NCBI GenBank assembly: GCA_020137815.1
Contig: CM035359.1
Location: 3,038,001-3,102,000 of the forward strand
Direction of reading: 5' to 3'
DNA: 64,000 nt
From: Hormiphora californensis
Taxonomy: Eukaryota > Animalia > Ctenophora
This document shows, one piece after another, positions 1 through 9,200 of the stretch (its first letter is position 1; every line of letters starts with the position of its first letter). Below the pieces are notes generated by a model that saw only the letters and a list, made by a program, of their open reading frames with translations, was not told the DNA's origin and made no database searches. A program made the position numbers and the translations under genes.

Positions 1-1
1 C

Positions 2-3000
2 GAGGTCTACGAAAATGATATTACACAATCCGAGGGCGAGATTTTCCTTGACTTCCTCAAATTCTACGCGTGCGAGTTTGACAGCGCTAAGAACGCCGTT
101 GATATCCGTCCTGAGCACGTGACGAAAGTCTCCACCGGTAACGGGGCAATATGGACAATCGAGGATCCGATTGTTGAGAAGAATCTGGGGAGGACAATGC
201 CGCCTGGGAGAACGTATGAGATGAAACTGTTTTATTACAACCTTCTTGTAATGCTGAGTGATCACCGAATGAATGAGGAGTGTCTATTGAAGGAGATAGA
301 ACAGGGAATTCAGATTTCAAAGAGACCAGACATCAACCCTCTCGCGAGTGAGTTTTGTTTCTTTTGCTTTATGTAACAGGTGTTAAGTGCTGTATACTAT
401 ACAGTACCAGCTGTTACATGTATGCAGCTATTAGTAACCCGACTCCAACATGTACATATATTTCATAACAACACTGCATTATAGTTGCCATGGTAACCAA
501 CCCACCTCCCTTCTTCAGAACCAGATAAGGTGAACAAACAGCAGCAAAATAAGAAACAGAATAGACGAGATAGAAAGAAGAAACCCAACCAACAGGAGGG
601 ACAGGAGGACGGCGATGCTGGACCATCATCATCTTCACCATCCAAGAACACCAAACAACCTGACCCGAAATCTATCACAAAAACGATCGAGAACAAGCCC
701 ACCGCAGGAGGTTCGGCCAAGAAGCAGAGAAACAAAAAGCAGGGAACTAGTTCGTCCGAGGGTGACATTGTCGTCATCAACGATGAGTCTCTCGACCAAA
801 TGATGGGAGAGTTGAAAATTGAGGACAATTTGACACACACAAAACAAGGTATTATGGTGACGAATACTCTTGGAATTATTTCATTTCCGGCTCTCGGTAT
901 TTCACGTTCACCGGAAATTCCCCCGATGAGACCTTTAGTAAACCGAGTAGTTTTACCTGTTTTGGAAAGAACATTGGTGGGAAATTTAAGAATCTGTAAT
1001 AGATGGTCAACAGCAGTTGTTAGTTTGATGGCCGGCTGCCTCTTGTTCTCCTCGCGTCGGAGAAAAAGAGTTTTGTAGCAGATAAATTTACAAGAAAACG
1101 GTTCAAAAACACAATTTTTACAAAGATTTTAGATTTTTTTACGGTTATTATAATCGTCGTTTCCCTTGGTCTTATCTCGCGGGGAGTAACAGTGCTCACC
1201 CTTATCTTCTTTTTCAGAGAGAAAGTCCGTGAAGGCGATCATGGAGGAGAATTTCACGAAACTTTCGGTGAACTCAGATTGGAAGGTATGTGATCTGCTG
1301 ATTGTGATTTCTGATAATTCATTACCAACTGAAGAATTATCGTAAGAAATGTCGCGTGTAATAGTTCTACCCGAAAATATAACAAGAATTATTGCATTAT
1401 GTATTCATAATGCTGTGTTTCCCTGCCCTACCGTTTCACGTGTCAGTGACATTGTCACTGCCAACAGGATCAAGGCTTGGTCATAATGTAATGTGAGATG
1501 CATACGATCTAGCTGTCAGTATACCAATTAAAGAGAAACAACGATTTTGCAGTACTAATATTCAATTAAGAACAGGAGCTTTCGACTGATCTATGTCAGA
1601 CGTCTTCAGCTATAACAACAATGAAAATGAAAGTGTTTATGTAGTGGAGAAGAGGATATGAGATCCGGGGAGGGGAGGAGAGAGGAAGGGATGAGATCCG
1701 AGAAGGAAGATGCGATCCGAGAGGAGGGGATGGGGGAGGTGATCCACGGGAAGGGAGAAGAGGTGATCCGAGCTGAAGAGAATTAGGAAACAGGTTTGGG
1801 AGATCTAGGTTTGATGGAGATGCCAGCAGGTCGGGGTTTGAAGGAGTTACCAATCCTGGGGAGAAGGTGAGTCCATTGGAGGTTGACAGTAGGAACTTTA
1901 TCTGTTCGGTTAATCGCCGGTTAAAGAGTGTGAATAGCCGCTTGTTCCAGTAGATTTAGACTGAGGCAGGAGGAAGAAGAGGAGAGGATAGATGTAGAAT
2001 TCCAGTCCATGGTGTGTCCAAATTCCCGAGCGTGGATAGCAGGATCAGTATACTTCTCACATAGCTTAGAGTTACAACGAAGTAAAACAACTACGTATTT
2101 GGTACGCTTAGAGTTAGCTAACTCCCAATCACATGACACTTGCTAACCAGCTTTTGACATTCCAACTTAACTACTTATCTAACATCTCACACTCGACTCG
2201 CAAGATGAAAATGTGTATGTAACACGCGAAACGCGCGGCAGAGCATTTCATGTTTTGTTGAGTGGCGCGCACACACACGTCCATCAAACTGTGTCAATGA
2301 GGTGTTTGATGAAGGAGTAGCTCGTCACTGTGTGCGCGGCTCTAGTTGCTACACCGTTGCCCCCGCAACGAAAGTGTGACCAAAAAATGTCCCTCTACCG
2401 ATTAGTTAGTATACCAAAATGTCGTTTTCGAATTCTAACCCTGCTATGCCTTTTTACAAAGTAAAAAGGCATCCGGGTGAATGCCTTCGGCATTCACCCG
2501 GGCAGGGAAAAAATCATATATTAATATTAATATACAACCCGTTTCAGGTGGTTTACTATTCAACTGTGGGACAAGGATGTGGAGATAACAGATCCCTACT
2601 AGTTATTCCCATCCTAGCTGCTTTGGGGCTGAAAGTACCTGGGCTGCTAGGTAAACACACAAATACAGTGTTGTTTAATTTGAGTTTCACCCTCTTCAAC
2701 TTGATAACCAGAACTATACTTTCATTACTTGGTAACGCAATTACCCCTACCTTGCAGGCACGCTAAAACGTGCCTTACTATCGCAATTCTTTATTGTAGA
2801 GGAGTAATTTCGTTATCAATTTCATTACATGTGTTGGCTCGGTTAAAAATCAATCAACTCCTTTCAGCTGACAGTGCGGGATCGCCATTGGAGAAGTTAA
2901 AGTGTATACCTGGATTCAGGGGCAGTCTGTCTGTTGAAGAGATGAACAACCTCCTTGAAAATGTGGGCTGTTTCATCGCCACTACCAAGGTATGACGTCA

Positions 3001-3940
3001 TTGTTATCAGGAACCGACCGAATTAAGTAAACAGCCAATCAGAACTCGTTATTTAGGTCACGTGACTGGTTATCAGCCAATCAGGGACCAGTATTTCCTG
3101 ATTCGGTCGGTTCCTGATTGTTATAATTGCCCCTCATTGCGAGTAATAGGGATGACTTCTTAACCAATGGGTATAACACTCCTTACTCAATCACAGACTC
3201 AGTGATGTACACCAGGTGTGTCATCTGGCTGCGTGTACACTTTATCTCATATACTCATGCACACCTCCGTATAATATTGATCGAAATCCACCTATATATA
3301 TATATCATATTCACTTACGTACGCAATACTCATATAATCATATTCACTCACGTACGCAGTACTCATATCATATTCAGTCACGTACGCAATACTCATATCA
3401 TATTCACTCAGGTTGAGGAACCCGCCACAACCTCTGATCCCTATCAGGAAAGTGAGAAAAAGAATTCTGAAGACCCCGACTGGAAGGCGGCCCTGATTGG
3501 CTCAACAGGCGCTCAGTATGTAATGGGTGAAGTTGGGTGTATTGGAAAGGATACCGTGATTGGGCAAAAGAAGATGCTCCGAGGGCTGAGAAACTCACTT
3601 GATAAGGTAATAACTTATATAATCCACTTCCAATTGTGTCTTATTTTGATAAACTTAGATTGTTTCTATGTTTCTGGATTCTCAAATCGCCTGCTATGTC
3701 TTTTACGATGAGCTAATATAATTTGGGTTAATATTTTAACATAGTATAACCATGTGCCATAACATATATTCCTTTCTGCAGCTTGAAGTATCGAGTGTTC
3801 TCCAGCTGACAGACAGTAACATTCCTCTTGGAAACAGTTTCGGTTATTGTCTTGAACTTTTTGAAGTTATGCAAGCACTTGAAGGTAGGCCAATACTGTA
3901 CCCTCCATCTCTCTGTCTCTCTCTCTCTCTATCTTTCTCC

Positions 3941-4017
<77 letters not shown>

Positions 4018-5643
4018 CCAGGTTCTGGGACCCAGGAGCTGATATATACAGTCACCCGACAGTGCGCCACTTTACTAACATTCTCCAAGCATGTCACTAC
4101 CGCTACAGAGGCTGATAAGCAGGTTGGAATTTGATGCCATTAGTCATTATGTAGTCATTGGCAGTTGTTGTAGTCATAGGTAGTAGTTGTAATTTATGAG
4201 TCTGAAATTCCCTCGGTTTTAGATGAAATCAGTCAGCAAGTCAATAAATTTTGCCCTAATTCCCCAGGTTCGAGAAGTTTTGGCGAATGGAGCAGCAAAA
4301 TCTAAATTCTTTGAGATGTTAGCCGGTCAGGGAGTATCTCCGGAAACAATCACTGCCTTGAAAGAGAAGAAGGATGTGCTGAAACTGGCCCCAGAGAAAA
4401 CCGTGATCAAGGCGCCTTTCCCAGGTACATGTTTTCGCTGTTTTCAATTGGACCAAAAGAAAAGCACCCTTCCCAGTTAGGGATCTATCTATCTATCTAG
4501 ATAGACAGTTAGGGATAATGAATTAGTTTAAACTCATTTTGGCTGGACCAAAAGTAAGGTACCCTTAGTTCCCAGGTAGAATTAAGGTGGTCTGATAAGA
4601 ATGTCACAGTGCCTTGTTTAACATAAAATATAGTCATCTCCCGTTATTTAAAGTTACCGTCACGGGCATGTCACAGAACCTTTATCATCAGTGTTAAATT
4701 CAACACTACTTCATTTCTACCGTTATGGGTTACTTCATTATATCTCCATTATCAGGTACCGTTATGGGTTGCACTACCGAGAATGTGGAGCGGGTTCTAA
4801 GGGGCCTTGGAGGGTACGGGGCATCTGGAGATGGCCTGGAGGTCCTCGTGGAATCTGGTGATAGAGTGACATCAGGGACTCCTATCTTACGAGTTCACCA
4901 TTCTAACCCGGTAATTCTCTTTCTATCTCTCTCTCTCTCTCCCTCTCTCTCTATAGATATACGTATATCTCCCTCATTCCCCCACTAGATATCATATCTC
5001 ATTCCCCCACTAGATATCTCTAGATAATATCTCATTCCCCATCCAGATATCTCCTAAATTGATGACAGCTGTTAAAAAGATGATCCAAATAGAGCGGAAA
5101 TCATCTCGGGTCCTCTTCACTCTCCGCAATGATCTCACTGCAAGAAAACAAAGGGCAGCAAACGGTATGAGGTTATCAAAAACAATTGCATCATACGATT
5201 TTATTTTCATATCTTTTTAAATGTTTTACTTACGTTTGCTAACTCTCTTTCTTTTACAACAGGAAAGGAGAAGAAGAAAGTGGAAGTTGTTGCAGTTTCA
5301 GACAGTACTGACTTGGTTACTACTCATGATCCAGTTGGCCCAACAAGTAGTCTTGAACCAGCTCTTGAAAATCCAACGAATATGCAAGAAGATGCAAGCG
5401 ATTTTGTGGTGGTAGCCACCCCTGAAGGTATGTACGTACTTTTGTACAAGCTGTGAAGATTTTGCACAAACTTTTATAACCCCCTTGTATCATGAAATGA
5501 AGCTTAATTCTGCAAGTGTCTTGAAAATTAGTTAGGAGTTGCAGAATACAGTACAGCTCGGTTCCGTGAACTGCACTGATGAATTTAAACCAAGTTTCCA
5601 TTTTATTTCAGGTGATATCCGAAGTGTAGAGGCCCTCAATTAA
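2..5643 (+). CDS. 5'-truncated multi-exon gene: Cid1/TENT-family PAP-associated domain + disordered linker + degenerate thymidine/pyrimidine-nucleoside phosphorylase domain
   Basis: Phase-consistent GT-AG exons: <2-347, 519-848, 1218-1285, 2548-2650, 2868-2989, 3412-3606, 3782-3884, 4022-4122, 4268-4424, 4756-4909, 5047-5164, 5263-5427, 5612-5643 (TAA). Exon 1 reads SEGEIFLDFLKFYACEFD..AVDIR..WTIEDPIVEKNLGRT (PAP_assoc pattern). Later exons read GDNRSLLVIPILAALGLKVP, LEKLKCIPGF, PLGNSFGYCLELFEVMQALEG, LANGAAKSKFFEMLAGQGV and GLEVLVESGDRVTSGTPILRVH, collinear with TYMP/PyNP. Confidence 0.75.
1540..2060 (-). mobile_element. Penelope-like retroelement 3' remnant (GIY-YIG C-terminus + CT-rich UTR)
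   Basis: Minus-strand AIHAREFGHTMDWNSTSIL...LLEQAAIH, then frameshifted NRTDKVPTVNLQW; resembles the PLE endonuclease tail. Ends in a hammerhead motif. Confidence 0.65.
1572..1613 (-). ncRNA. minimal type I hammerhead ribozyme motif
   Basis: Minus strand: atag CTGAAGA c gtctga cataga tcagtc GAAA gctc ctgt. Conserved core, stem II with one mismatch, palindromic AGCT stem III, 4-bp stem I. Confidence 0.6.
3008..3116. mobile_element. 109-bp hAT-type MITE
   Basis: TIR CAGGAACCGACCGAAT; 8-bp TSD ATTGTTAT on both sides. Confidence 0.85.
3905..4018. repeat. (CT)n microsatellite forming the polypyrimidine tract of the 4022 acceptor
   Basis: Long CT run ending in ccccag. Confidence 0.9.
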
Positions 5644-6266: not shown

Positions 6267-9200
6267 ATGACGGAAGGAGCCAGTAGTACACCAAGTTCAG
6301 ATTTAGGTTAGTTCACCATGCTGCACGGTTCAAAACTGTGTTAGACAACTTTCAAATTGCAGTGATTAATTGGGTTCAGGGTTGTTGCCAATAAATATAT
6401 CAGTGGGTAATTGGTTAGTTGCCAATCAAAATATCAGTGTTAATTGACACAGGTCGGATATCAGCGGATCTCATATCAACTGATCACGAATTAAAGGAGT
6501 TAAAGAAGGATTTAAATGCGACACAAACTGCTTTTGCAACATTTCGAGAAGACTATAGGTACGTGGTATTAGTGAGAATATAGTACAGGGTGTTCATTTT
6601 GGATCTTTACAAGCGTTGGGCTTCACCCAGAAAAAAGTTGACAAGATTAGGTCATGAAACTTCATACTTGCACTATTCTATACCCTCATTCAAGGTTCCT
6701 GGGGGTTTTGGAGCTTTAGGACCCTGGGAACTGTGTTTTTGGCATCACAACTACCAGAAGGAATTTTTTGCTGGTGCTAAGACTTTGCTAAAATGTTTTT
6801 TGGGTATTTTCTATGTCAATCCTAAAGTTTCATAGAGATTGGATGTGTTTTTCAGACTCAAAATTTCGTAAAAAGTGGCTGGAAAGACTCAATTTTAGCC
6901 GTTTTTGAGCTGTTTTCGAGCCTTTCCAGCCACTTTTATCGAAATTTTGAGTCCGAAAAACACATCCAATCTCTATGAAACTTTAGGATTGACATAGAAA
7001 ATACCCAAAAAACATTTTAGCAAAGTCTCAGCACCAGCAAAAAATTCCTTCTGGTAGTTTTGATGCCAAAAACACACTTCCCGGGGTGCTAGAGCTCCAA
7101 AGCCCCCAGGAACCTTGAATGAGGGTACAGAATGGTCCACGTATGAAGTTTCATGACCTGATCTTGTCAACTTTTTTCTGGGTGAAGGCCAACGCTTGTA
7201 AAGATCCAAAATGAACACCCAGTATGTATATAAGTTCGTCATTCTTATAATAAAATAAATAATAATCACTTTACCAAACTCGCAATTTAACCCTTTCCCT
7301 AACCACTCACAAGTTAACCACTCGCCAGTTAACCACTTGCCCCTCTATTTTCAGTCAACCGTTAACCACTTGCCCCTATATTTGCAGTCAACTGTTAACC
7401 ACTTGCCCCTCTATTTTCAGTCAACTGTTAACCACTTGCCCCTCTATTTTCAGTCAACTGTTAACCACTTGTACCTCTATTTTCAGTCAACTGTTAACCA
7501 CTTGTACCTCTATTTTCAGTCAACTGTTAACCACTTGCCCCTCTATTTTCAGTCAACTGTTAACCACTTGCCCCTCTATTTTCAGTCAACTGTTAACCCT
7601 CTATAATGATACCAACAATGAACTACAAAAACTCCTTCATGAACGAAGTTTAGAGGGCGCCGCTGTTCAGGTGAGAAAAAAATGAAAACTACAAACTAAA
7701 AAATTTGGCCTTATCTAAAAAAACTCAGTTTTTAAGTTCTAAGAACGAAATCGAAGACTTTCAAGTTTCAATTAGTTTTTAGATAGAAAAACTAAAATAA
7801 ATTGGTTTTGCAGGAGCTTGCAGAAAATGTCGAGTTACGGGATCGGTGTAGATCTTTAGAGATTGAAAAATGCAAATACAGAGAGGTAAATAAAACGTAT
7901 TTCCCAGTGTTTTCAAGAAAAATATTGATTTTCTATTGCGATTATCTAATAACTACCTCTTAATTAACTCTTAATTAATTAACTCCGTTAATTATCAGAT
8001 GTACGAGGCAGCAATGGAAGATGCCCACACCAGACCACCACAACAAACAACATCCCCATACAATAACGATTCTGAGGAACTGAGGGAACAAATACGGGAC
8101 ATGGCGGGGCAAATACAAGAGCTAGAAATCGTAAGGGCAGATCTGGGAATGCGTCTACAACATCAAAGTAAGTGTGTCAGGGGTGTGCCAGGGGTTTTAA
8201 AACTATCATTATTTCTTTTTATATCAAGGAGCTCTGTCCCCTAGGCCCCCGCCGGGGCTGTGCCCCTGGACCCCCTGGTGGGGGGGTTTTCACGGCCCCA
8301 CTCCCCCTGACTGGGGCTGCCACCCCTAAAATAGGGGTCCGCTAAATAGGGGGTCAGGCGAATAGGCGTTTTCGTAAATATAGGTCTGGTACGTTGATTC
8401 ATTAAGCTGAGTCCTACACCTTCCCATTACACTGCCCCTTCCCTCTCTTGATCAGATCTGGTGAACTGGTGAAGCTCGGTAATAACTGAGCTCTGGTTAC
8501 ACTAAACACTAAACAACAATTATCCCTCTCTCTCCCTCCCCTCCCCCTGGCTCCCATCTCTCACTCCCCCTGTCCCTACAACAATGTACAATGTTGTACA
8601 TATTCTTTGTCACAAAACAACAATACAAGCCGTTCGTTGTCCGTGGAATTTATGCACTCTGCATGTTGCTGCAGAAGTTGATATCTCCCCACTCCTGAAT
8701 TGGAGAAAGACGTAACGCGCGATAACTGGGTTGTGAGCAAAGATGGTTTGTTTGCGCGCGGATGGCGCTTTCCATTCCCCGCGGACTCTCTGGACTCCTT
8801 CCAACAACTGTTTCACCCCACAGTTTGGGGCCAAATAAAACCCTCATGAGCCACACTGACAACCTTAACAAGTGCTCTATTATCTAATTGGAACTAATTA
8901 CCCCCAATTAGCGGTAGAGCAAAATGAGACTATGGATGACCTGGCAAGATGCCGAGTAGAGCTAGAGGCAGTGGAGGGAGCCCACACTGAGGCGAGGGAG
9001 GAGGCAGACTTCTACAAAGAGCAAATAGAGGTCATGAAGGTAGGTTGGAGATTGTGCTGAAGTGCACACTTTCATGATGGTGATACCGTTTTATTTGTCG
9101 GTAGACATTGTTCATAATTCATTACACTAGAAACAAAGCATGTTTCTTGAAAAGATTTTAACACCAAATTTCACAATTATTCCCATGTTCACAGTAAACA

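What the first reader, a model, noticed from the sequence alone, without database searches (positions are those of the whole stretch)
2..5643. Terminal nucleotidyltransferase (Cid1/TENT PAP-associated domain) fused in frame to a thymidine-phosphorylase fold
Seen: all 12 introns are GT-AG with matching phases (e.g. 347/519 a|aa, 848/1218 g|ag, 1285/2548 phase 0). This gives one ORF running from a PAP_assoc domain, through a K/Q/S-rich linker, into a PyNP/TYMP alpha-beta domain plus PYNP_C. Known: TENTs normally partner zinc knuckles or RRMs; I know of no PyNP fusion. Inference: an RNA-tailing enzyme with a repurposed nucleoside/phosphate-binding or scaffold module, potentially linking pyrimidine status or RNA ends to tailing.
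Basis: partly seen in the sequence, partly recalled or inferred. Interest (0 to 1): 0.88.

Follow-up and report, generated by a model that had tools for sequence, protein, structure and literature searches.

The report
RNA-tailing enzyme fused to dead thymidine phosphorylase
This comb-jelly gene really does join a complete RNA-tailing enzyme to a copy of thymidine phosphorylase that has lost its catalytic residues, and the same fusion occurs in at least two other comb jellies, so it is a real, conserved and so far undescribed enzyme architecture whose function is unknown.

Summary

- **Gene model.** There are 13 exons and 12 GT..CAG introns with matching phases. The coding sequence is 2,685 nt (894 aa). 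Exon 1 starts 689 nt upstream of the window and encodes a complete Cid1/TENT core: palm domain with GS, DxD and the third Asp, plus PAP_assoc.
- **Downstream exons.** They encode a basic K/Q/S-rich linker and then a very diverged thymidine-phosphorylase (TP) domain. Five separate exons hit TP models collinearly.
- **RNA evidence.** A contig from an oligo-dT environmental RNA library joins exon 2, exon 3 and exon 4 exactly at 848|1218 and 1285|2548.
- **Fused orthologues.** A 2,796-nt intron-less contig (L020) carries one 912-aa ORF with the same architecture. Mnemiopsis leidyi has an annotated 925-aa "hypothetical protein" with it as well.
- **Fold.** The AlphaFold model of the L020 TP-like region matches human TP residues 77-466 (Z 39.9).
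- **Pseudoenzyme.** The TP phosphate- and nucleoside-binding motifs are intact in this genome's canonical TP gene on contig 6. They are replaced in the fused copy, and the first alpha helices are missing.
- **Selection.** 23 of 27 exonic variants in environmental RNA contigs are synonymous.

The exon 1-exon 2 joint was not seen directly in RNA of this species. It rests on the orthologues and on a splice donor conserved across the family. The function is inferred. Novelty: a new variant of a known kind, restricted to ctenophores as far as the searches reached.

The parts
1..347 (+). Exon 1, window part. The exon starts at an ATG 689 nt upstream of the window (G000:C10:3037312). It encodes the whole TENT core (palm plus PAP_assoc) and ends at a phase-1 GTGAGT donor.
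519..848 (+). Exon 2: basic K/Q/S/N-rich linker with a conserved motif at its 3' end (IVVINDESLDQMMGEL). It is phase 1 at both ends, so skipping it keeps the frame; the Mnemiopsis isoform P0167 lacks the equivalent exon.
   Evidence: (last 28 nt spliced to exon 3)
1218..1285 (+). Exon 3: TP homology begins here (the last helix of the TP alpha region, ending SDWK).
2548..2650 (+). Exon 4: degenerate first phosphate loop. It reads VYYSTVGQGCGDN where canonical TP has DKHSTGGVGDK.
2868..2989 (+). Exon 5: degenerate second loop (LLGADSAGSP where canonical TP has GRGLGHTGGT), followed by the conserved LEKLKCIPGF.
3412..3606 (+). Exon 6: replaces the TP nucleoside-binding segment and has no detectable TP similarity. 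The RNA contig uses an alternative in-frame acceptor at 3448.
3782..3884 (+). Exon 7: TP alpha/beta domain.
4022..4122 (+). Exon 8: TP alpha/beta domain.
4268..4424 (+). Exon 9: end of the TP alpha/beta domain and the link to the C-terminal domain.
4756..4910 (+). Exon 10: PYNP_C-like domain.
5047..5164 (+). Exon 11: end of the PYNP_C-like domain and start of the charged tail.
5263..5427 (+). Exon 12: acidic tail ending in the conserved DFVVVATPE motif.
5612..5643 (+). Exon 13: last 10 codons and the TAA stop.

Best explanation
This is a single protein-coding gene of 13 exons encoding 894 aa. From N to C terminus the product has four parts: (1) a complete, probably active Cid1/TENT ribonucleotidyl transferase, closest to the TUT4/TUT7 catalytic module; (2) a disordered, strongly basic linker encoded by one exon that can be skipped without breaking the frame; (3) a thymidine/pyrimidine-nucleoside-phosphorylase fold domain that lacks the first ~45 (bacterial numbering) to ~76 (human numbering) residues of TP and has lost the phosphate- and nucleoside-binding motifs, so it is a pseudoenzyme; (4) a charged tail with a conserved DxVVV..E.G motif. 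The fusion predates the split between pleurobrachiid and lobate ctenophores and is under purifying selection. Shown: the exon structure, the exon 2-3-4 splicing, the orthologous fused transcript and gene model, the intact NTase triad, the TP fold in the orthologue, the loss of the TP motifs, and the synonymous bias of variants. Inferred: the enzyme adds untemplated nucleotides to RNA 3' ends; the TP-derived domain is non-catalytic and acts as a docking or regulatory module that selects partners or substrates; the basic linker may bind RNA or direct nuclear import. The architecture is near-certain (about 0.93). The functional part is roughly 0.55-0.6.
For: Gene model: all 12 introns are GT..CAG and in phase. 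RNA: an oligo-dT RNA contig of 179 nt consists of 28 nt of exon 2, all 68 nt of exon 3 and 83 nt of exon 4, and six further joints were seen. TENT core: MTPAP-like_central 58.8 bits and PAP_assoc 27.1 bits. TUT7 and TUT4 are the best PDB hits, with GS, DxD and the third Asp aligned. D89, D91 and D145 are invariant in 13 family members. Conserved donor: all 11 relatives that reach the end of exon 1 show a read-through NGT-AAG (C-[G/S/C]-K) tail exactly where this gene has A|GTGAGT. This was verified in DNA for the same-genome paralogue (TGC T|GTAAGT). Orthologues: L020 carries one 912-aa ORF with the same architecture. The genomic ORF P0163 is 99% identical to L020 residues 1-350 and diverges exactly after HPFC. 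Mnemiopsis leidyi ACHWQZ_G001544 exists as 925- and 796-aa forms. Every window exon from E1 to E11 maps collinearly on both orthologues. TP homology: per-exon hits; genuine TPs hit the orthologue region at E 6e-11; the AlphaFold model has pLDDT 78.9 and matches human TP at Foldseek E 4e-26 and at VIA Z 39.9 over TP residues 77-466. Pseudoenzyme: the canonical TP on contig 6 keeps DKHSTGGVGDK, SGRGLGHTGGT, and YATRDITSTV followed further on by SKK, whereas the fused copy does not. Selection: 23 of 27 exonic variants are synonymous and 21 of 27 lie at third codon positions (p = 3e-6). Exon 2: it is open in the model frame only, which happens in 0.3% of shuffles, and it has no in-frame ATG before position 800.
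Against: The exon 1-exon 2 joint (347|519) was not covered by any RNA contig from this species or its close relatives. The exon 2 side of the bridging contig is only 28 nt, just under the tool's 31-nt rule. The RNA data are environmental contigs, not reads of the sequenced animal. Spliced-leader trans-splicing is common in the likely source species (PMC8527503), so a downstream-only mRNA cannot be excluded as an additional product. The AlphaFold model was built from an alignment that was mostly genuine TPs, which biases it toward that fold, and it is a model of the orthologue, not of this protein. No activity, RNA target or ligand has been tested. The spliced protein of this window was never assembled, searched or folded.
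Confidence: 0.72

Rival explanations
1. There are two adjacent genes: a stand-alone ~354-aa TENT that ends at the stop at 374-376 inside 'intron 1', and a separate TP-like gene whose mRNA starts, perhaps by spliced-leader trans-splicing, at 519 or 1218 and is translated from the ATG at 800 or in exon 3. On this view the fused ORF is a coincidence or a rare chimera.
For: The closest database relatives are 306-382 aa long. The read-through ORF stops 9 codons after the donor. Exons 2 and 3 contain in-frame ATGs. Trans-splicing is found on at least 56% of mRNAs in Hormiphora. No RNA covers the 347|519 joint.
Against: The short relatives are ORF-caller read-throughs of a conserved phase-1 donor. 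A natural transcript and a curated Mnemiopsis model both carry the fusion. Exon 2 is conserved coding sequence with no start codon for its first 94 codons. The one RNA contig that contains exon 3 has exon 2 in front of it, not a leader.
Confidence: 0.04
2. The gene is fused, but the TP-derived domain is still functional as a ligand binder or enzyme. It would bind a nucleoside, base, phosphate or ribose-1-phosphate and couple nucleotide-salvage status to tailing, or it would act on the 3'-terminal nucleoside of RNA.
For: The whole NP-II fold is retained over roughly 370 residues. The LEKLKCIPGF loop is identical in three species separated by about 50% divergence in the TENT part. The TP-like exons are under purifying selection.
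Against: Both glycine-rich phosphate loops are replaced: Lys and His of KHSTGG become Tyr-Tyr, and GHTGGT becomes ADSAGSP. The RD.T.TV / SKK segment is unrecognisable in exon 6 and differs between species. Part of the alpha domain, which closes over the active site in TP, is missing.
Confidence: 0.12
3. The fused mRNA exists, but in this species the main product is the exon-1-only TENT made by retention of intron 1 (tail SEFCFFCFM), and the long form is a minor isoform.
For: Intron 1 read-through stays in frame for 9 codons and then stops. No coverage data exist for positions 348-820. Mnemiopsis already shows isoform variation around this exon.
Against: The downstream exons are under purifying selection and conserved across ctenophores. 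The donor and acceptor are both consensus sites. The read-through tails are unconserved even between near-identical relatives.
Confidence: 0.1

Closest known systems
Mnemiopsis leidyi hypothetical protein ACHWQZ_G001544 (P0166, 925 aa; P0167, 796 aa) and the environmental transcript L020 (912 aa)
   Same: They are orthologues with the same order of parts: TENT core, basic linker, TP-like domain, charged tail. The split after HP.C / NPLA falls at the same place. Every window exon from E1 to E11 aligns collinearly.
   Different: Identity is about 49% in the TENT part and 28-69% per TP-like exon. The linker sequences are largely unalignable. Neither orthologue has been described functionally.
TUT4/TUT7 (ZCCHC11/ZCCHC6) catalytic module, GLD-2, CutA, URT1, Cid1 (non-canonical TENTs)
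   Same: Pol-beta-type palm with GS, DxD and a third Asp, followed by PAP_assoc. These are the best PDB sequence hits (E 7e-18 to 1e-7).
   Different: This protein has no zinc knuckles, no N-terminal inactive NTase copy and no RRM. Where TUT7 has NHN, this protein has EKN; that this His is the one said to favour UTP in Cid1 and TUT7 is from my own recall of the literature. The C-terminal partner domain is a TP fold.
Thymidine phosphorylase / pyrimidine-nucleoside phosphorylase (NP-II family; human TYMP, bacterial DeoA/PyNP)
   Same: The alpha/beta domain and the PYNP_C domain are retained in collinear order. The orthologue model superposes on human TP residues 77-466 (Z 39.9, rmsd 3.5 A, 361 residues). 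The L.KL..IPGF loop is of the classical type.
   Different: The first alpha helices are missing. The phosphate loops and the nucleoside-binding segment are replaced. Scores are below the Pfam cut-offs. Intron positions differ from those of the canonical TP gene of the same genome. The domain is fused to a TENT.
Same-genome paralogous TENT at G000:C6:2544351-2545295
   Same: It is 32% identical, encoded on a single large exon, and ends in the same phase-1 GTAAGT donor. A predicted S/P-rich second exon follows, also phase 1 at both ends.
   Different: No TP-like exon was found within about 8.7 kb downstream. Its C-terminal partner is unknown.

Membership tests
Cid1/TENT non-canonical nucleotidyl transferases | Pol-beta-type palm domain with the hG[GS] motif and the catalytic DxD plus third Asp | tested here: met
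   MTPAP-like_central scores 58.8 bits against a cut-off of 27. YGSCINGFGSKNSDVDC and IEMDVSF align with the TUT7 catalytic motifs. G77, S78, D89, D91 and D145 are invariant in 13 relatives.
Cid1/TENT non-canonical nucleotidyl transferases | PAP-associated (PAP_assoc) domain after the palm | tested here: met
   PF03828 scores 29.7 and 27.1 bits against a cut-off of 22.6.
Cid1/TENT non-canonical nucleotidyl transferases | Untemplated nucleotide addition to RNA 3' ends | not testable with these tools
   This needs a recombinant enzyme assay.
Thymidine/pyrimidine-nucleoside phosphorylase (NP-II) | Glycos_transf_3 alpha/beta domain | tested here: inconclusive
   Scores are below the Pfam cut-off: nothing per exon and 21.8 bits against 27 in the orthologue. 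However, there are collinear NCBIfam hits on exons E4, E5, E7 and E9, genuine TPs hit the orthologue at E 6e-11, and the orthologue model matches TP at Z 39.9. The fold is present; family-level sequence thresholds are not reached.
Thymidine/pyrimidine-nucleoside phosphorylase (NP-II) | PYNP_C C-terminal domain | tested here: inconclusive
   Exon 10 scores 19.4 bits against a cut-off of 27 and 17.3 bits in the genome scan. It aligns to human TP 418-445. In the orthologue model this region is covered by the match to TP.
Thymidine/pyrimidine-nucleoside phosphorylase (NP-II) | N-terminal alpha domain (Glycos_trans_3N) | tested here: not met
   PF02885 has no hit in the window, whereas the canonical gene on contig 6 is hit. 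The structural match starts at human TP residue 77 and Salmonella TP residue 45.
Thymidine/pyrimidine-nucleoside phosphorylase (NP-II) | Phosphate-binding loops (KHSTGGVGDK and GHTGGT) and the nucleoside-binding RD.T.TV / SKK segment | tested here: not met
   The window copy has VYYSTVGQGCGDN and ADSAGSP. Exon 6 has no TP similarity at E <= 10. The canonical TP of the same genome keeps all three motifs. The roles assigned to these residues come from the TP structural literature as I recall it, not from a test here.

The most novel reading that the evidence does not exclude
The TP-derived domain is not inert. It would keep a remodelled pocket that binds a nucleoside, base, phosphate, ribose-1-phosphate or the 3'-terminal nucleoside of RNA. 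This would make the protein an RNA-tailing enzyme regulated allosterically by nucleotide-salvage metabolites, a metabolite-to-RNA-3'-end link invented in ctenophores.
Probability: 0.1. Interest if true: 0.8.

Novelty: new variant of a known kind. Interest (0 to 1): 0.55.

Why it matters
TENTs gain their specificity from accessory domains such as zinc knuckles, RRMs and inactive NTase copies. A metabolic-enzyme fold recruited as the accessory domain is a new solution. It has been retained under selection across ctenophore lineages, and no paper describing it was found in the two searches run here. It also adds a clear case of a nucleoside phosphorylase turned pseudoenzyme. The finding gives ctenophore RNA biology a concrete, testable lineage-specific factor. 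It also carries a practical warning. In ORF-called protein databases this family appears as stand-alone ~350-aa TENTs, only because the callers read through a conserved splice donor.

Tried and rejected
1. Pfam scans exon by exon were almost blank for the TP part. NCBIfam full-length TP models worked better.
2. A genome-wide Pfam scan found only the canonical TP on contig 6 and a weak PYNP_C hit in the window.
3. A tblastx comparison of the window against the canonical TP locus was swamped by (CT)n microsatellites; only exon 5 gave a real match.
4. The top 150 TENT representatives contained no TP-like segment. I first took this as a sign of stand-alone TENTs. I rejected that reading once the C-[G/S/C]-K tails were recognised as read-through GTAAG donors.
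6. The search for homologous proteins with the exon 5 ORF found no candidates.
7. The first metagenome scan, with the single protein as query, found nothing. The scan with the family alignment succeeded.
8. A codon-usage frame test prefers the model frame for exon 2, but it mostly reflects stop-codon counts, and some introns show similar spreads between frames, so I give it little weight.
9. No TP-like exon was found downstream of the contig 6 TENT paralogue.
10. The spliced protein of this species was therefore not searched, aligned as a whole or folded. The natural orthologous transcript L020 and the Mnemiopsis protein were used instead.

Full report
**Where the window lies.** The window is G000:C10:3038001-3102000 of a 110.7-Mb assembly in 45 contigs. 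That size agrees with the published Hormiphora californensis assembly, 110 Mb in 44 scaffolds (PMC8527503).

**Checking the observation.** I re-derived the exon model from the raw sequence and verified it by script without joining the exons.
- There are 13 exons: 2-347, 519-848, 1218-1285, 2548-2650, 2868-2989, 3412-3606, 3782-3884, 4022-4122, 4268-4424, 4756-4910, 5047-5164, 5263-5427 and 5612-5643.
- All 12 introns run GT..CAG. All phases are compatible and no exon has an internal stop.
- The frame continues upstream of the window. Exon 1 is a single open stretch starting at an ATG 689 nt before window position 1, immediately after a ...TTTTTTCTCTAG acceptor-like site.
- The complete coding sequence is 2,685 nt, or 894 aa.

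**The TENT part.** The 345 aa encoded by exon 1 form a complete TENT core.
- Pfam gives MTPAP-like_central at 58.8 bits and PAP_assoc at 27.1 bits.
- The best solved relatives are the TUT7 and TUT4 catalytic modules, then GLD-2, CutA, URT1 and Cid1.
- The GS, DxD and third-Asp motifs align with the catalytic motifs and are invariant across 13 relatives.
- Where TUT7 has NHN, this protein has EKN. That His is, from my recall of the literature, the one that favours UTP. Uridine specificity should therefore not be assumed.

**The TP part.**
- Pfam per exon gives only a sub-threshold PYNP_C hit on exon 10.
- Five separate exons each have a TP model as best NCBIfam hit, at collinear profile positions.
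- Human TP is the top PDB sequence hit for exons 4 and 5 and the second for exon 10, at residues 120-142, 151-185 and 418-445.
- Exons 6 and 8 give nothing.
- The genome also holds an ordinary TP gene on contig 6. Its exons keep DKHSTGGVGDK, SGRGLGHTGGT, and YATRDITSTV followed further on by SKK.
- The fused copy reads VYYSTVGQGCGDN and LLGADSAGSP, and it has no recognisable counterpart of the nucleoside-binding segment.
- It also lacks the N-terminal alpha helices.

**Is the fusion real? RNA evidence.** No run of the animal itself was usable, but four environmental RNA libraries hold near-identical contigs.
- In an oligo-dT library, one 179-nt contig consists of the last 28 nt of exon 2, all 68 nt of exon 3 and 83 nt of exon 4. 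Its GT..AG joints fall exactly at 848|1218 and 1285|2548.
- Six further predicted joints are present in these contigs.
The orthologues align from 3412, so both acceptors may be used.
- No contig covers positions 381-820, so the exon 1-exon 2 joint was not seen directly.

**A misleading first result.** The nearest TENT relatives in the protein databases are all 306-382 aa long. That looked like evidence for a stand-alone TENT.
- All of these relatives end in ...HP.C-[G/S/C]-K followed by unconserved tails.
- The motif C-[G/S/C]-K corresponds to TGY-NGT-AAG, which is a phase-1 GTAAG splice donor read through by an ORF caller.
- This gene has NPLA|A-GTGAGT at the aligned column.
- The same-genome paralogue shows the donor in DNA (TGC T|GTAAGTT) and is followed by a plausible phase-1 second exon.
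- The donor at the end of the TENT exon is therefore ancient and conserved.

**Decisive evidence from orthologues.** A scan of JGI metagenome contigs with the family alignment returned L020, a 2,796-nt contig with one uninterrupted 912-aa ORF.
- Its order of parts is TENT, then after HPFC a basic linker, then the TP-like region (VVYYKATDVMGDSR ... SLEKLKCIPGF), then a charged tail.
- The genomic ORF P0163 is 99% identical to L020 residues 1-350. It diverges exactly after HPFC (GKFVVVGFS-stop versus EPDIEKP...), which demonstrates the splice in that species.
- Searching with the TP-like region of L020 found Mnemiopsis leidyi "hypothetical protein ACHWQZ_G001544". It exists as a 925-aa form and a 796-aa isoform lacking the linker exon. 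It is 63% identical to L020 in the TP-like region and carries TENT Pfam domains at the N terminus.
- The next hits in that search are genuine TPs at E 6e-11 to 1e-3.
- Every window exon from E1 to E11 maps collinearly on both orthologues, including the end of exon 2 (IVVINDESLDQMMGEL against IIQNDPYLLEDMMKEI). By eye, the C-terminal DFVVVATPEGD motif also matches DYVVVVNTEDGE in L020.

**Fold.** AlphaFold2 was run on L020 residues 455-860 with a 14-sequence alignment and gave pLDDT 78.9 and pTM 0.79.
- Foldseek puts TP and PyNP structures first (human TP E 4e-26, TM 0.77), with anthranilate phosphoribosyltransferases far behind.
- VIA-align gives Z 39.9, rmsd 3.5 A and 361 aligned residues against human TP residues 77-466, and against Salmonella TP residues 45-427.
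- Two caveats apply. The alignment was mostly genuine TPs, and the model is of the orthologue, not of this protein.

**Selection.** Of 27 exonic differences between the window and the environmental RNA contigs, 23 are synonymous and 21 lie at third codon positions (p = 3e-6). They are spread over the TENT exon and the TP-like exons. Exon 2 is open only in the model frame, which happens in 0.3% of shuffles, and it has no in-frame ATG in its first 94 codons, so it needs an upstream coding exon. The codon-usage test adds little.

**Interpretation.** The gene encodes a probably active TENT tethered by a basic, skippable linker to a TP-derived pseudoenzyme domain. I consider a non-catalytic docking or regulatory role the most likely one for that domain. 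A remodelled ligand pocket is not excluded (about 0.1). Two separate genes are now very unlikely (about 0.04). An additional exon-1-only product or a leader-capped downstream-only mRNA cannot be excluded, because trans-splicing is common in this animal.

**Novelty.** Two full-text searches found no paper linking TENTs or PAP-associated domains with thymidine phosphorylase, or describing ctenophore TENTs of this kind (also 22). The Mnemiopsis protein is deposited only as "hypothetical". I class this as a new variant of a known kind. As far as the searches reached, it is restricted to ctenophores.

Noticed in passing
window:3006-3118: A 113-bp MITE-like element lies in intron 5, with 25-nt terminal inverted repeats at 3006-3030 and 3094-3118 (88% complementary). 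Summed contig depth in the environmental RNA libraries reaches about 4,000 here, and many contigs break exactly at its ends, so it is a very high-copy element.
   Followed up: partly
window:1525-2128: Environmental contigs skip 1524->2106 or 1524->2129 (non-GT..AG joints, with 10-21 replacement letters). This suggests a ~580-600-bp insertion nested in another repeat inside intron 3, present in this genome and absent in other copies or relatives.
   Followed up: no
window:3412-3448: Exon 6 has two possible in-frame acceptors, CAG|3412 and CAG|3448. One RNA contig uses 3448, another contig begins exactly at 3412, and the orthologues align from 3412.
   Followed up: partly
window:5260-5330: In one environmental RNA contig, a relative has the exon 12 acceptor shifted 3 nt upstream (one extra Ala) and a 6-nt in-frame deletion at 5324. 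These are in-frame indels in the acidic tail.
   Followed up: no
G000:C6:2544351-2545295 (L008 1480-2535): A paralogous TENT (32% identity, 351-aa exon) ends in the same phase-1 GTAAGT donor. It is followed by a predicted S/P-rich exon (L008 about 2651-2849) that ends in another phase-1 GTGAGT donor. Its further exons and C-terminal domain are unknown, and no TP-like exon lies within 8.7 kb downstream.
   Followed up: partly
G000:C6:3898613-3902998 (minus strand; L006): This is the genome's canonical thymidine phosphorylase gene. It has many introns and intact catalytic motifs, and its intron positions differ from those of the fused copy.
   Followed up: partly
window:6590-7269 and L002:7279-8088: Pairs of near-identical ORFs lie on opposite strands: window 6590-6835(+) with 6973-7269(-), and L002 7279-7449(+) with 7918-8088(-). 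These are inverted duplications flanking the gene on both sides, probably transposon remnants.
   Followed up: no
window:3900-4020 and 4911-4967: Long (CT)n microsatellites lie in introns 7 and 10. They caused the read tool to skip these stretches and swamped translated searches.
   Followed up: no
P0167 (Mnemiopsis leidyi, 796 aa): This annotated isoform joins the TENT exon directly to the first TP-like exon and omits the linker exon. The same skip would stay in frame in this window (exon 1 phase 1 to exon 3 phase 1).
   Followed up: no
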